This document shows positions 5,638 to 8,995 of a stretch of 64,000 nt of DNA, one piece after another (position 1 is the first letter of the stretch; each line of letters opens with the position of its first letter). The DNA lies in IMG/VR virus record IMGVR_UViG_3300027896_005002, positions 62,001 through 126,000 of that record. One strand, 5' to 3'. The position numbers and the translations under genes are program-made. Below the pieces are notes generated by a model that made no database searches, had not been told where the DNA came from, and saw only the letters and a list, made by a program, of their open reading frames with translations.

Positions 5638-5717
5638 TGCCCGTGATTGGAATCGAACCAACATTTTCAGCTTCCTTTACGATTATCTGTTTAGGAAACA
5701 GACTCGGCTACACGGGC
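5638..5717 (-). tRNA. non-canonical tRNA-Arg(CCT), rearranged D region
   Basis: GCCCGTG/CACGGGC, 8-nt linker, TCTGT-TTCCTAA-ACAGA, 23-nt segment starting TAATCGTAA, T-arm GTTGG-TTCGATT-CCAAT. Confidence 0.75.
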
Positions 5718-5720
5718 GCT

Positions 5721-6629
5721 CTAATGTTCTATGTGTGTAATTTGAATATCTTCTTTATTTATTTCAGCTGAATATTCTATTCCACAATTAATACTATTCA
5801 TAGGAATCGGTCTGTCTGCTAATGGATTATGAATAAAAATAAAATCATTTCCTAATATTTTATCAGTTGAGCTAATATTTGCATATGAGTAAATTACTCC
5901 ACTTATATGAGAATATTGTAAATCAAGAAAATAATCTGTCTTAACAGGTTCATTTGATGATTTTTTAAAAATTTTATTACGATTTTCACATGTTTGTCTA
6001 ACAATTTTAGAACTAACTTTATCAATATGAATGACTACATTACCAACTGCTAAAAGAGCGGCTACACATTGCGGCACACCGCCTTCAATATACAATGGTA
6101 TACCATTTAAACCCTCAAGCCATCCACCACTAATGCAAATTATAGTACTTTGCACATTTTTGATTATACCATTTTCAATATCATGCCGAATTTTTTTTGC
6201 TTTTTCAGTAAAACTATTCGTATATCTTAGAATAATTTGGTTTTGCGGGTAATCCATGATACCATTGTAATTCGTTTTTGGAATAGAATCTGGATTGTCT
6301 TTTTTTCCATCTGACATAGTAACTACTTCTATCCAACAATTTAAATTTTCAACAAATAAATCCGGACCTTTATCTGATGGATGAGAAACATTGAATAACA
6401 ATCGCTTTCTAAAAACTGTAGCAAAATAAAGTTCACTATAGCGAGCAGCAAAATCATGTTTCAACTGTGTTTTAAAAGTTTTGTCAACTAAATCATGTGA
6501 TATCTCATACAATTTCTCTACTCGATCACTAAATAACACACATAAATCAGGCGGAAAACCTCCTTGACCTCCTTGAATTTTATTATATAAAGGATCAGTT
6601 GCAGATGGATCTGGATTTAATAATGTCAT
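5721..6629 (-). CDS. hypothetical protein, possible restriction-endonuclease-like fold
   Basis: 302-aa ORF; KGPDLF..NCWIEVVT resembles a PD-(D/E)xK core (weak). Confidence 0.45.
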   Translation of the reverse strand: MTLLNPDPSATDPLYNKIQGGQGGFPPDLCVLFSDRVEKLYEISHDLVDKTFKTQLKHDFAARYSELYFATVFRKRLLFNVSHPSDKGPDLFVENLNCWIEVVTMSDGKKDNPDSIPKTNYNGIMDYPQNQIILRYTNSFTEKAKKIRHDIENGIIKNVQSTIICISGGWLEGLNGIPLYIEGGVPQCVAALLAVGNVVIHIDKVSSKIVRQTCENRNKIFKKSSNEPVKTDYFLDLQYSHISGVIYSYANISSTDKILGNDFIFIHNPLADRPIPMNSINCGIEYSAEINKEDIQITHIEH

Positions 6630-6656
6630 TTTAATCTTTGTATTCTAAAATAAATA

Positions 6657-6739
6657 TGGCGCCCGTGATTCGATTCGAACGAACATTTTCAGCTCCAATT
6701 ACGATTAACTGCTTAGAAGGCAGTCTCGGCTACACGGGC
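6657..6739 (-). tRNA. non-canonical tRNA-Arg(TCT), rearranged D region
   Basis: GCCCGTG/CACGGGC-G-CCA, 8-nt linker, ACTGC-CTTCTAA-GCAGT, TAATCGTAA segment, T-arm GTTCG-TTCGAAT-CGAAT. Confidence 0.78.
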
Positions 6740-6824
6740 TTAATTTCTTAAAATCAAAAAAACTATTGTTATCCTTTTAATCAACTAATAAAACAAAGTT
6801 TTAAATAACATATAATAAAAAAAT

Positions 6825-7616
6825 ATGGGTACTTCACAAGGTAACTTCAAAAGAAAACTTACTGGATTTTATGATAATGAAGATCGAAAAAAACAATGGA
6901 GTCAAGCTAGAATTAATACAAACAAAAATTCGGTCATTCTTAATCATAAAAAAACAATTCAGCAATTAACAAAATTAAAAATTAATGTTCAATGGTTTGA
7001 ACTACAATTGCAACAACATCGTATTACCACAATTACTAAAAATTTAAAATTACTTGACATTAAACATCCAAAACTAGCACTTAAATATTTAAAATCTTTA
7101 TTAGAGCCAAAACGATTAAAAGAAATTGCAAAAGAAAAACGAACATCTAAAACATCTGTCACACTTAAAAATCGATTGAGAACTGATATCATACTGAAAA
7201 AGAAATATATTAAAAATCTAACAAAGAGAAATCATCATAAATATCGATCAAAAGGTGAATTACGTCTCAAACATTGGTTACAAAAAACTTATCCTTACTA
7301 TAATTGGAAAAGTATACATTTAACTTATAACAATTCAATTTATGAATTCGATATCTATTCAGAACAATATGACGATTTTTTCATTGAATATAACGGCGCT
7401 TGTCATTATAAACAAATTCATAGTTTAGAAAACTTTCAGCGTATTCAATGTCGAGATGAACAAAAAATACAAATAATGAAAGAACTTAATAAAGAATTTC
7501 TAATCATCAAGGACAGCATGTCCTTTGAAGAACAAACAAAAACTGTGACAAAATTCTTTAATTTAAGTAGTAATCTTCAAATTAAAAAATTGGAGGTGCG
7601 GGGACACTTTATCTGA
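6825..7616 (+). CDS. free-standing DUF559/Vsr-like (EDxHD-type) putative homing endonuclease
   Basis: Basic N-terminal half, then SKGE..YEFDIY..FIEYNGACHY..RDEQK. Confidence 0.72.
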   Translation: MGTSQGNFKRKLTGFYDNEDRKKQWSQARINTNKNSVILNHKKTIQQLTKLKINVQWFELQLQQHRITTITKNLKLLDIKHPKLALKYLKSLLEPKRLKEIAKEKRTSKTSVTLKNRLRTDIILKKKYIKNLTKRNHHKYRSKGELRLKHWLQKTYPYYNWKSIHLTYNNSIYEFDIYSEQYDDFFIEYNGACHYKQIHSLENFQRIQCRDEQKIQIMKELNKEFLIIKDSMSFEEQTKTVTKFFNLSSNLQIKKLEVRGHFI

Positions 7617-8231
7617 TGTTTTCACACCAGTGTGGACTATCTCTTCATCCAATTGGATGATGGGCGCTAATAAAGGATTATTGATTGAGTTTCTCACCTT
7701 TTAGTCTCTGCACTTTCCAACCTACAAAACACTCTTTCAGTTGGCTTAGCTCAGGATTGCCATATCATTTTACTGATTTAGGGTTCCCTGAATTCACCCA
7801 TTTTCTTCATCAATTGTTACCAATTGAGTCAACCATTTTGATTGAACCCCGGTCCAGAAAGTTTTCCATGACAATTACTACATGTTTATTCTATTCTATC
7901 TTGAATACTCACTCCGTAAATAGACAAGCGTTCAATGAGTACTTCGTAAGTGTCACTTCGGTCCCCTTCTCTTTTACGCGTTCGGTTGTCCTATCCGTAT
8001 ATAAACAGTTCAAGTTGCTACGGCTCCGCTTAAACTTCGACCGCCTTTATTTAGGCAGCCATTGCTGGTGCCTTTGCGCACATTGCAGCGAACTGCAATG
8101 CGAACTGAGCACCGAAAACTGAACCAATTTTGTTGGCAGTTGTTGTTTCATTGGATGATTTAAGAGGCCAACCAATGAGTCCTCTACATGCAATTATCAC
8201 TTCACCCAATCTGTCGAAACCTGACACCCCC
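7591..8231 (-). ncRNA. ssrA: tmRNA split by a T-loop intron (exon1 7841-8231, exon2 7591-7604)
   Basis: 5' GGGGGTGTCAGGTTTCGACAG; acceptor GGGGGTG/CACCTCC with G3-U70; resume context ACAACT-GCC; tag ANKIGSVFGAQFALQFAAMCAKAPAMAA (8051-8137); T-arm CGGGG-TTCAAT|T-CCCCG. Confidence 0.92.
7605..7840 (-). mobile_element. ORF-less group I intron (IC3-like, 236 nt)
   Basis: P1 TCAAT/GTTGA with U-G splice-site pair; core motifs GGCAATCCTGAGC, TGCAGAGACT, AGATAGTCC; terminal G at 7605. Confidence 0.9.
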
Positions 8232-8249
8232 ATAATTTCAAAGAACATT

Positions 8250-8430
8250 AAATCTGGCTGCCGTGCCGCAGCCACCGTTTCATCGAATAGGTACTTACCA
8301 TGGCTATTCGCTATCCTCTACAATGATGCCGAAGCACTAACCACGACACGTCAAGCCAAAGGTATCATATGGTCTCAGCTTGACCGTCCCTGTGACAAGA
8401 GCAAAGGTCGTTAATCATGTCGCCATATGA
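8250..8430 (-). ncRNA. unassigned structured RNA upstream of tmRNA
   Basis: GC-enriched intergenic segment with helices TCATATGG/CCATATGA, CGACAT/GTGTCG, GTCAAGC/GCTTGAC, CGAATAG/CTATTCG, GGCTGC/GCAGCC. Confidence 0.5.
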
Positions 8431-8440
8431 CTTATCAAAT

Positions 8441-8995
8441 TCACATTTTCTCTTTAACAAATATTTTTGCAATGTTATAAGCGTCATCAACACCTCTGTG
8501 ATGACGACCTTCAAGAGGAATATCTAACATTGTTAAAGCTTTATCCATTCCTATAGGTTTTATTTTATGCCTCTCAGCAAATTCATGTTTAAGACTTCTA
8601 CTAATTTTAAATGGTACTTCAATATCATATCTTTTACAATCTTTAGCTAACTGTCGATGATCATAGAAGCCCCAAGAACAAAATATAAAATTACTTAAAC
8701 TTTTCTCTGTTATTAAATAAACATTTTCTCGCCAAATATCCATTACAGTTCTAAAATCTTTTGCAATATCTATGGTAAATTGTTCAATACCGGTCAGTCG
8801 TCTACAAAAATCTGATAACATCGGATTCAATTGTGGTTTAACAAATAAACCTTGTGATAAAATTATGCGATAATCATCAGTAACAATTGAATAACCAATT
8901 TCAATTATTTCATTTTCATTTCGATTTGCTTTTACTCGACCTTCATTAGTATTTCTATCCCAACAAGTTGCTTCAAAATCTACTATTAAATACAT
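8441..8995 (-). CDS. DEDDh 3'-5' exonuclease (ERI-1/KapD-like)
   Basis: VDFEATC, EIIEIG, WGFYD, HHRGVDDA. Confidence 0.9.
   Translation of the reverse strand: MYLIVDFEATCWDRNTNEGRVKANRNENEIIEIGYSIVTDDYRIILSQGLFVKPQLNPMLSDFCRRLTGIEQFTIDIAKDFRTVMDIWRENVYLITEKSLSNFIFCSWGFYDHRQLAKDCKRYDIEVPFKISRSLKHEFAERHKIKPIGMDKALTMLDIPLEGRHHRGVDDAYNIAKIFVKEKM

What the first reader, a model, noticed from the sequence alone, without database searches (positions are those of the whole stretch)
6825..7616. Free-standing endonuclease whose stop codon is supplied by the tmRNA intron
Seen: the DUF559-type ORF runs antisense through the whole tmRNA 3' exon and ends (HFI-TGA, 7605-7616) inside the last 12 nt of the ORF-less intron. 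Known: collaborative homing between a free-standing endonuclease and an ORF-less intron was described for cyanophage psbA. Inference: the endonuclease cuts intron-less ssrA alleles and spreads together with the intron.
Basis: partly seen in the sequence, partly recalled or inferred. Interest (0 to 1): 0.68.

Follow-up and report, generated by a model that had tools for sequence, protein, structure and literature searches.

The report
Free-standing endonuclease beside phage tmRNA intron
A huge phage carries its own tmRNA gene, split by a small self-splicing intron, with a selfish DNA-cutting enzyme gene pressed against its 3' end; the enzyme's stop codon falling inside the intron is an accident of crowding, but the gene belongs to an undescribed endonuclease family found only at the 3' ends of phage tmRNA genes.

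Summary
The geometry is real. ORF 6825-7616 (+) runs antisense through the 14-nt tmRNA 3' exon (7591-7604). It stops 12 nt inside a 236-nt ORF-less group I intron (7605-7840) that sits at T-loop position 7.

The overlap itself means little. The last 16 residues are modelled as disordered. Relatives cross the exon in another frame or stop just before the tmRNA. A stop-free run of that length has a chance probability of 0.3-0.4.

The protein has a basic helical N-domain and a Vsr/EDxHD-type nuclease domain (I-Bth0305I Z 10.8). It has no direct Pfam DUF559 hit.

Relatives were found at ten other independent loci, all phage-like contigs and all within about 20 nt of a tmRNA 3' end. Seven are convergent with intron-bearing tmRNAs; three of those copies are decayed. 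One locus keeps only a 35-codon remnant. Two lie on the same strand just downstream of intron-less tmRNAs. One intron-bearing relative has no ORF at all.

The ORF, the intron and the tmRNA body give conflicting trees. Both elements therefore look mobile, but they are not a fixed pair.

Best reading: a new free-standing homing endonuclease family aimed at the tmRNA 3' region, which may mobilise the intron in trans. Collaborative homing is plausible but unproven. Interest is moderate.

The parts
6825..7616 (+). Free-standing homing-endonuclease-like ORF, 263 aa, stop TGA at 7614-7616
   Evidence: ORF list. Ten further independent loci carry a copy or remnant, always at a tmRNA 3' end. AlphaFold model pLDDT 90.7.
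6825..7238 (+). N-terminal basic all-helical domain (aa 1-138), presumed DNA-binding
   Evidence: Helices at pLDDT above 90. pI 10.7, 35 K+R against 9 D+E. No convincing fold match: best Z 5.2, to SANT and HMG three-helix domains. A DNA-binding role is inferred.
7239..7565 (+). Vsr/EDxHD-type PD-(D/E)xK nuclease domain (aa 139-247)
   Evidence: VIA-align: I-Bth0305I catalytic domain 3r3p Z 10.8, NGO0050 3hrl Z 10.4, Vsr 1cw0 Z 10.4, all over model residues 139-250. Foldseek's top hits are the same. E145, D176, E188, G191, H194 and D211 are nearly invariant in 61 sequences; N190 is invariant in the close family.
7566..7616 (+). Non-conserved C-terminal tail (aa 248-263) plus stop; antisense to the tmRNA downstream flank, the 3' exon and the last 12 nt of the intron
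   Evidence: pLDDT 40-52. Relatives read the exon in a different frame or stop before the tmRNA. A run of this length is expected by chance with P 0.31-0.40.
7591..7604 (-). tmRNA 3' exon: last T-loop U, T-stem 3' strand, acceptor 3' strand, discriminator A (CCA not encoded)
   Evidence: Sequence. It pairs with the 5' end at 8231-8225 including G3:U. T-stem covariation appears across loci.
7605..7840 (-). ORF-less group I intron, 236 nt, at T-loop position 7
   Evidence: Rfam RF00028, 91 bits. The consensus fold of nine homologous introns has 67 pairs, 32 of them with compensatory changes. The splice-site U-G is kept in 9 of 9, and a P1 exon/guide pair is G-C in eight loci and A-U in the window.
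7841..8231 (-). tmRNA 5' exon (tRNA-like 5' half, tag reading frame, pseudoknots, T-stem 5' strand and six T-loop bases)
   Evidence: Rfam RF00023, 80 bits. The tag frame ends ...APAMAA-stop at 8051. ARAGORN misses the gene because of the intron.

Best explanation
ORF 6825-7616 is an intact member of a previously unnamed family of free-standing homing endonuclease genes. The protein has a basic helical N-domain and a Vsr/EDxHD-type nuclease domain. The family's niche is the DNA immediately 3' of phage-encoded tmRNA genes.

Like other free-standing homing endonucleases, it most likely cuts the conserved 3' part of tmRNA genes (T-arm and acceptor region) in co-infecting relatives that lack it. 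It is then copied in during break repair, together with flanking DNA.

The 236-nt ORF-less group I intron lies only 14 nt from the ORF. It is a second, separately mobile element. It lies within any plausible co-conversion tract, so the endonuclease can carry it into intron-less alleles, and it may also spare the carrier genome from self-cleavage. That would be facultative collaborative homing.

The ORF reading through the 3' exon and stopping inside the intron is a by-product of two convergent elements being packed against each other. It is not a functional coupling.

Shown: the anatomy, the fold, conserved catalytic residues, exclusive linkage to tmRNA 3' ends, the decay and loss series, and discordant histories. 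Inferred: cleavage activity, the target site, trans-mobilisation and immunity.
For: Nuclease:
- Fold matches I-Bth0305I, Vsr and a DUF559 structure at Z 10.4-10.8 over aa 139-250 (the same top hits).
- E145, D176, N190, H194 and D211 occur in the same order as the I-Bth0305I residues E170, D196, N208, H213 and D222 named in PMC3239194. They are nearly invariant in the family.
- Distant HMMER hits carry DUF559, PvuRts1I_N and DUF2726 domains plus zinc fingers or homing-endonuclease repeats. Language-model neighbours are DUF559.

Linkage:
- Every relative with recoverable context lies within about 20 nt of a tmRNA 3' end. These are the window, L002/L003, L004, L066, L069, L070/L071, L072/L073, L067, L074 and the L017 remnant.
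- None was found in 185,579 prokaryote species genomes by pattern scan.

Life cycle:
- Intact copies: window, L002, L004, L066, L067, L074.
- Decayed copies: L069 (nonsense plus frameshift), L072/L073 (frameshift), L071 (5' deletion).
- L017 has a 747-nt deletion relative to L004 and keeps the last 35 codons.
- L077 has no trace of the ORF.

Mobility:
- The ORF tree pairs (L002,L004) and (L069,L073). The tmRNA-exon tree pairs (L002,L073) and (L004,L069). Each data set rejects the other's pairs (p-AU 0.0006-0.009).
- The L002 and L071/L077 introns are 92% identical although their exons are 57% identical. The exon data reject that clade (p-AU 0.005).

Incidental overlap.
Against:
- There is no direct hit to any curated nuclease family. 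The profile against the PDB gives E 0.15 for 3r3p.
- The N-domain has no recognised DNA-binding fold.
- The clades tested were chosen after seeing the identity matrices. There are only seven to nine taxa, and the tmRNA bodies are near saturation at 51-72% identity, so the AU tests are indicative only.
- The discordance could come from ordinary recombination between co-infecting phages rather than endonuclease-driven homing.
- Convergent transcription into a presumably highly expressed RNA gene might silence the ORF.
Confidence: 0.55

Rival explanations
1. Strict collaborative homing. The enzyme's recognition site spans the T-loop insertion site, so it cuts only intron-less ssrA. The intron is its obligate immunity element, and the two spread as one unit.
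For: - All seven convergent-orientation loci carry the intron, as does the L017 remnant.
- The ORF lies 14 nt from the insertion site.
- The ORF decays in intron-bearing lineages (L069, L071, L073, L017). This is expected once targets disappear.
- The ORF-less intron has moved horizontally and needs some trans-acting nuclease.
- There is a precedent in F-CphI and psbA (PMC6083498).
Against: - Intact family members sit beside uninterrupted T-loop sites identical to the window's spliced site (L067, L074).
- L077 has the intron but no ORF or remnant.
- In L071 the ORF groups with the window (81% identity) while the intron groups with L002 (92%). At least one of the two elements therefore moved without the other.
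Confidence: 0.25
2. Two unrelated selfish elements share a hot spot. The endonuclease targets the tmRNA 3' flank or the intergenic junction and has no functional relation to the intron. The intron arrived independently, as at other T-loop position 7 sites.
For: - tmRNA T-loop introns are widespread, and 96% lack an internal endonuclease gene (PMC11915505).
- All four presence/absence combinations exist.
- The ORF and intron trees are discordant.
- The tmRNA 3' end is a well-known target of integrating elements (PMC11915505).
Against: At 14 nt apart, co-conversion is almost unavoidable whenever a break is repaired from an ORF-plus, intron-plus donor. Orientation correlates perfectly with intron state: seven convergent loci plus one remnant carry the intron, and both same-strand loci lack it.
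Confidence: 0.15
3. Not a homing endonuclease. Instead it is a domesticated Vsr-like nuclease with a phage function, such as DNA repair, host DNA or host ssrA attack, or defence or counter-defence, that merely neighbours the tmRNA.
For: The Vsr fold also serves repair enzymes. Huge phages carry many nucleases. No target has been shown.
Against: Frequent pseudogenisation and clean loss in close relatives argue against a needed function. So do the tree discordance and the strict positional linkage in two orientations.
Confidence: 0.05

Closest known systems
F-CphI and the ORF-less psbA intron of cyanophage S-PM2 (collaborative homing; Zeng, Bonocora and Shub 2009, as described in PMC6083498)
   Same: A free-standing endonuclease gene in a phage lies next to a gene interrupted by an ORF-less group I intron. 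The intron could protect the carrier and be mobilised in trans.
   Different: F-CphI has an Endo VII-type catalytic motif; this protein is Vsr/EDxHD-type. The host gene there encodes a protein; here it is a structured RNA. Here the ORF is convergent and overlaps the 3' exon. Here cleavage and immunity are untested, and relatives exist beside intron-less alleles.
T4 MobE with the defunct I-TevIII nrdB intron (trans homing; PMC2790892)
   Same: A free-standing endonuclease cuts near an intron-bearing gene and carries a neighbouring element that cannot move alone.
   Different: MobE is an HNH enzyme, and the intron there still holds a defunct endonuclease gene. Here the intron is a minimal 236 nt and the enzyme belongs to another fold.
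T4 SegB in the tRNA gene cluster (PMC2330249)
   Same: A free-standing homing endonuclease lies among stable-RNA genes of a phage and drives preferential inheritance of that region. This phage also keeps nuclease ORFs among its tRNA genes.
   Different: SegB is a GIY-YIG enzyme, and no intron or tmRNA is involved.
I-Bth0305I, prototype of the EDxHD homing endonuclease family (PMC3239194; PDB 3r3p)
   Same: It is the best structural match (Z 10.8). The putative catalytic residues have the same order (E, D, N, H, D). The architecture is bipartite, with N-terminal DNA-binding and C-terminal nuclease domains. The source is a phage.
   Different: I-Bth0305I is encoded inside a recA intron and has NUMOD/HTH repeats. 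This protein is free-standing, its N-domain has no recognisable match, and sequence similarity is not significant (E 0.15).
Intron-form tmRNA genes (Williams 2002; PMC11915505, 2025)
   Same: A group I intron at T-loop position 7, with -1 U and a terminal G, that reconstitutes the T-arm. It is short and ORF-less like 96% of known cases.
   Different: The known set is bacterial, and its few endonuclease genes are LAGLIDADG and lie inside the intron. Here the carrier is a huge phage and the nuclease gene is outside, on the opposite strand.

Membership tests
Free-standing homing endonuclease gene | Encodes a nuclease domain with intact catalytic residues | tested here: met
   Vsr/EDxHD fold at Z 10.4-10.8. 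E145, D176, E188, H194 and D211 are nearly invariant; N190 is invariant in the close family.
Free-standing homing endonuclease gene | Optional gene between conserved genes: present or absent in otherwise syntenic relatives | tested here: met
   L004 against L017: a 747-nt gap between the tmRNA and the nadD-like gene. L071 (remnant) against L077 (nothing), with 98% identical introns.
Free-standing homing endonuclease gene | History discordant with flanking DNA (horizontal spread) | tested here: met
   The ORF and tmRNA-exon trees conflict, and AU tests give p 0.0006-0.009. The clades were chosen post hoc, there are few taxa, and the exon alignment is divergent.
Free-standing homing endonuclease gene | Site-specific cleavage of alleles lacking the gene | not testable with these tools
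   Needs purified protein and substrates.
EDxHD (I-Bth0305I) homing endonuclease family | Vsr-like catalytic domain with the E...D...(N)...H...D residues | tested here: met
   3r3p Z 10.8, 93 of 98 residues aligned. The residue order matches that given in PMC3239194. No residue-level superposition was printed, so the residue mapping is by motif.
EDxHD (I-Bth0305I) homing endonuclease family | Significant sequence similarity to family members | tested here: not met
   The family profile against PDB sequences gives E 0.15 for 3r3p. The single sequence finds nothing.
EDxHD (I-Bth0305I) homing endonuclease family | N-terminal NUMOD/HTH DNA-binding repeats; encoded within an intron or intein | tested here: not met
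   No NUMOD or HTH Pfam hit. N-domain fold best Z 5.2. The gene lies outside the intron on the opposite strand.
Pfam DUF559 (PF04480) | Match to the family HMM at the curated threshold | tested here: not met
   No hit even at E 1. Only 6 of 61 distant homologues carry PF04480. The DUF559-type structure 3hrl matches at Z 10.4. The relation is at superfamily level only.
Collaborative homing pair (F-CphI/psbA type) | Free-standing endonuclease gene adjacent to a gene carrying an ORF-less self-splicing intron | tested here: met
   The ORF ends 12 nt inside the 236-nt intron. Six other convergent loci show the same layout.
Collaborative homing pair (F-CphI/psbA type) | Enzyme cuts the intron-less allele at or near the insertion site, and the intron prevents self-cleavage | not testable with these tools
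   Indirect evidence against universality: intact relatives lie beside uninterrupted T-loop sites (L067, L074).
Collaborative homing pair (F-CphI/psbA type) | Endonuclease gene and intron co-distributed and co-inherited | tested here: not met
   All four presence/absence combinations are found. In L071 the ORF groups with the window and the intron with L002.
Intron-form tmRNA gene | Group I intron in the T-loop with -1 U paired to G in P1 and a terminal G; the exons rebuild the T-arm and acceptor stem | tested here: met
   U-G is kept in 9 of 9; 32 of 67 pairs show compensatory changes; the T-stem covaries. The position equals 'position 7' of PMC11915505.

The most novel reading that the evidence does not exclude
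The long-standing oddity that about 96% of tmRNA T-loop introns carry no endonuclease gene, yet occur in 21 phyla, would be explained by trans-mobilisation. Free-standing Vsr/EDxHD-type endonucleases parked at the tmRNA 3' end would cut intron-less ssrA genes, and phages carrying tmRNA, intron and endonuclease together would act as vectors for the intron. The family described here would be the first example of such a helper.
Probability: 0.2. Interest if true: 0.7.

Novelty: new member of a known kind. Interest (0 to 1): 0.5.

Why it matters
Free-standing endonucleases that partner with ORF-less introns are known from only a few phage protein genes. This case would extend the idea to a structured RNA gene (tmRNA) in huge phages. 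It would also add a new free-standing branch to the small EDxHD/Vsr-type homing endonuclease group.

The family offers a natural series for studying how such genes come and go: intact, nonsense and frameshift, truncated, remnant, absent, and two orientations. It also gives a testable answer to why tmRNA introns spread without their own endonuclease. In practice the protein is a candidate long-site nuclease whose target can be guessed from its position.

The headline claim, that the intron supplies the stop codon, carries no weight of its own.

Tried and rejected
Searches that gave nothing:
- Direct family assignment: Pfam, PHROGs, NCBIfam and PDB sequence searches of the ORF found nothing useful. 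The family profile against PDB sequences was not significant.
- N-domain fold search: only weak three-helix matches, Z up to 5.2.
- Viral-contig scans for relatives found nothing with A1. With A6 they found only two distant nuclease-domain relatives, in other contexts and without tRNA or tmRNA.
- A genome-contig scan found no relative in prokaryote genomes.
- A first metagenome attempt with A4 failed for lack of a conserved stretch. It was redone with A6.

Uninformative results:
The 80 loci fetched were anticodon-loop tRNA introns (70) or unclassified (10). None was a tmRNA and none had a family member nearby, so this says nothing about bacterial tmRNA introns.
- The sigma-70 promoter and terminator scan of 6500-8500 was uninformative. 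The tmRNA-downstream hairpin is strong in L002, L004 and L017 but weak in the window.

Steps not run:
Splicing, expression and population variants are unchecked.
- No search was made with a joined (spliced) tmRNA. The exons were handled by reference. The only joined sequence was built inside a script, to see where the ORF would end on an intron-less allele: 353 aa.

Correction: the row labelled L069 was P0009, which comes from another contig. One search repeats the tree with L069's own reading frames, with X at the two breaks.

Ideas rejected:
- Reading L069's in-frame TGA, which falls at the conserved Trp151 codon, as code 4. There is a single instance and a frameshift as well, so I treat it as decay. 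No alternative code was used.
- The ORF as a former or future intron-encoded gene. It is on the opposite strand and covers the exon.
- The overlap as a regulatory antisense device. The frame and the overlap are not conserved.

Full report
**1. What is there**

The window is bases 62001-126000 of a 416-kb virus record, a huge phage that CheckV estimates to be 77% complete. It is 31% GC and carries more than 25 tRNA genes.

On the minus strand Rfam finds a tmRNA (80 bits) that runs directly into a group I intron (91 bits). ARAGORN misses the tmRNA because of the intron. Reading the sequence against homologous loci gives:
- 5' exon 8231..7841.
- Intron 7840..7605 (236 nt).
- 3' exon 7604..7591.

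The exon boundaries rebuild a normal T-arm and a 7-bp acceptor stem with G3:U. The base before the intron is a U paired to G in P1, and the intron ends in G. This is 'position 7' of the T-loop, the main site in the tmRNA database paper (PMC11915505).

The intron is under structural selection. In nine homologous introns the consensus fold has 67 pairs, 32 with compensatory changes. These include an exon/guide pair in P1 and the whole P9 hairpin. The tag reading frame ends ...APAMAA-stop.

**2. The observation**

ORF 6825-7616 (+, 263 aa) crosses the whole 14-nt 3' exon antisense. Its last three sense codons and its TGA occupy 7605-7616, the last 12 nt of the intron.

Without the intron the frame would stay open for 353 codons. 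The intron therefore literally supplies the stop. That carries no statistical weight. Only 16 codons separate the end of the folded domain from the stop, and such a stop-free run has probability 0.31 (composition) to 0.40 (empirical) here.

**3. What the protein is**

No curated family or PDB sequence matches it. An exhaustive profile search found eight close relatives and about 57 distant ones aligned only to residues ~135-250. Of the 61 sequences aligned and scanned, some carry PF04480 DUF559 (6), PvuRts1I_N (8) or DUF2726 (3), plus zinc fingers or homing-endonuclease repeats.

The AlphaFold model is confident (pLDDT 90.7):
- Residues 1-135 are helical.
- Residues 140-247 form an alpha/beta domain.
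- Residues 248-263 are disordered (pLDDT 40-52).

The alpha/beta domain matches the I-Bth0305I catalytic domain (Z 10.8), a DUF559-type structure (3hrl, Z 10.4) and Vsr (Z 10.4). Foldseek gives the same top hits.

E145, D176, E188, G191, H194 and D211 are nearly invariant across 61 sequences, and N190 is invariant in the close family. Their order mirrors E170, D196, N208, H213 and D222 of I-Bth0305I (PMC3239194).

The N-domain is very basic (pI 10.7) but has no convincing fold match. 'DUF559-type' is therefore right at superfamily level only. The closest characterised relative is the EDxHD homing endonuclease.

**4. Relatives and their context**

Every relative whose DNA could be fetched lies at a tmRNA 3' end.

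| Group | Loci | State |
|---|---|---|
| Class A: convergent with an intron-bearing tmRNA | window, L002/L003, L004, L066 | ORF intact |
| Class A | L069 | TGA at the Trp151 codon plus a frameshift |
| Class A | L072/L073 | frameshift in the N-domain |
| Class A | L070/L071 | 5' deletion leaving 113 codons |
| Remnant | L017 | intron-bearing tmRNA; 747-nt gap relative to L004; the last 35 codons are kept |
| Absent | L077 | intron 98% identical to L071's; 18 nt between the tmRNA and the next gene |
| Class B: same strand, 13-20 nt downstream of an intron-less tmRNA | L067, L074 | ORF intact, 36-37% identical to the window's |
| Neither element | L059 | tmRNA body closest to the window's (68%); no intron, no ORF |

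Sources: class A; L017; L077; class B; L059.

In L017 the retained 35 codons coincide with a strong hairpin plus U-run just after the tmRNA, probably its terminator.

No family member was found in 185,579 prokaryote species genomes.

**5. Is the overlap meaningful?**

Among class A loci, five run into the intron. Four of them read the exon as N/Y-G-G/D-E-G-T, while the window uses another frame (L-E-V-R-G-H). L066 and L071 stop one base before the tmRNA end. The stops fall at different places in the P9 hairpin. The tail is unstructured. The overlap is a packing accident, and the apparent tail conservation merely reflects tmRNA and intron conservation.

**6. Are gene and intron a unit?**

Identity matrices and ML trees say no.
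- Introns: L002 groups with L071 and L077 (92% identity; support 82/94). Their tmRNA bodies are 57% identical, and the exon data reject that clade (p-AU 0.005).
- ORF nuclease domains pair (window,L071), (L002,L004) and (L069,L073).
- tmRNA exons pair (L002,L073) and (L004,L069).
- Each data set rejects the other's pairs (p-AU 0.0006-0.009; one search used a wrong row for L069).

Both the ORF and the ORF-less intron have therefore moved between phage tmRNA genes, and not always together.

Caveats: the clades were named after seeing the matrices, there are few taxa, and the exon alignments are very divergent.

**7. Mechanism**

The data fit a free-standing homing endonuclease whose target lies in the conserved 3' part of tmRNA genes. 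Fit comes from the position, the two orientations, the optional presence, the decay series and the horizontal history. The T-arm DNA is itself a short palindrome that the intron splits, which would suit a dimeric Vsr-type enzyme; this is inference only.

With the intron 14 nt away, repair from an ORF-plus, intron-plus donor would nearly always co-convert the intron. This gives the ORF-less intron a means of spread, as described for F-CphI/psbA and MobE.

Whether the intron is also the immunity device is open. The perfect correlation of the convergent orientation with intron presence, and ORF decay in intron-bearing lineages, speak for it. Class B, L077 and the discordant trees speak against an obligate partnership.

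**8. Novelty**

tmRNA introns, collaborative homing, EDxHD enzymes and phage tmRNAs are each known. I found no description of a free-standing endonuclease family tied to tmRNA genes. The tmRNA database paper reports only internal LAGLIDADG genes, in 4% of introns. I rate this a new member of a known kind, of moderate interest.

**9. Limits**

No reads could be examined. No alternative genetic code was used. The only mended reading was L069's phage gene, with X at its breaks, for a tree.

Noticed in passing
window 5638-5717 (-) and 6658-6742 (-): Two paralogous tRNA-like genes, about 88% identical. Both have a reduced D-arm, a roughly 20-nt variable arm and anticodon loops reading CCU and UCU (Arg); their anticodon stems differ. 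ARAGORN misses both. Rfam finds only the first (38.5 bits). They flank a 302-aa ORF (5721-6629, -; phrog_8571, unknown function).
   Followed up: partly
G000:C1:315884-316085 (-), = L076 about 1500-1700; ORF L076 54-1271 (-): A second ORF-less group I intron in the same phage genome (55 bits) lies inside a tRNA gene between tRNA-Phe and tRNA-Ser. A 405-aa ORF with several zinc fingers and a DUF559-like motif lies about 200 nt downstream, beyond tRNA-Ser. This may be another pairing of an intron with a free-standing nuclease.
   Followed up: partly
window 8441-8995 (-): An RNase T/DEDD-type exonuclease gene (Pfam E 3e-14) lies immediately upstream of the tmRNA. The same neighbour is seen in L004 and L017, and a nadD-like gene lies on the other side in L004, L017, L071 and L077. 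This is a conserved tmRNA neighbourhood in these huge phages.
   Followed up: partly
L002 (GCA_030650065.1, contig JAUSEY010000060.1): The 50.8-kb contig carrying P0003 is deposited as a Nitrosarchaeum MAG. It carries a tmRNA, tRNAs, primase, NusG, Cpn10 and a DUF559 gene like the phage loci, so it is probably a misbinned phage contig. PMC11915505 raises the same concern for 'archaeal' tmRNAs.
   Followed up: no
L069 about 2455-2460: The in-frame TGA in the decayed ORF falls exactly on the invariant Trp151 codon. I treat it as a nonsense mutation because a frameshift follows, but the genetic code of that phage was not examined.
   Followed up: no
L080-L159 (bacterial genomes): The conserved core of this tmRNA intron is shared, as an exact pattern, with anticodon-loop tRNA introns in many bacterial phyla (cyanobacteria, Nitrospira, Bacteroidota and others). 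At least 120 places matched, and 70 of the 80 fetched are tRNA-type. This hints that the phage tmRNA intron belongs to the tRNA-intron lineage.
   Followed up: partly
window 7591; L066, L067, L074 tmRNA 3' ends: The CCA end is not encoded in the window, L002, L004, L017, L069, L071, L073, L077 or L059. It is encoded in L066 and in both class B loci.
   Followed up: no
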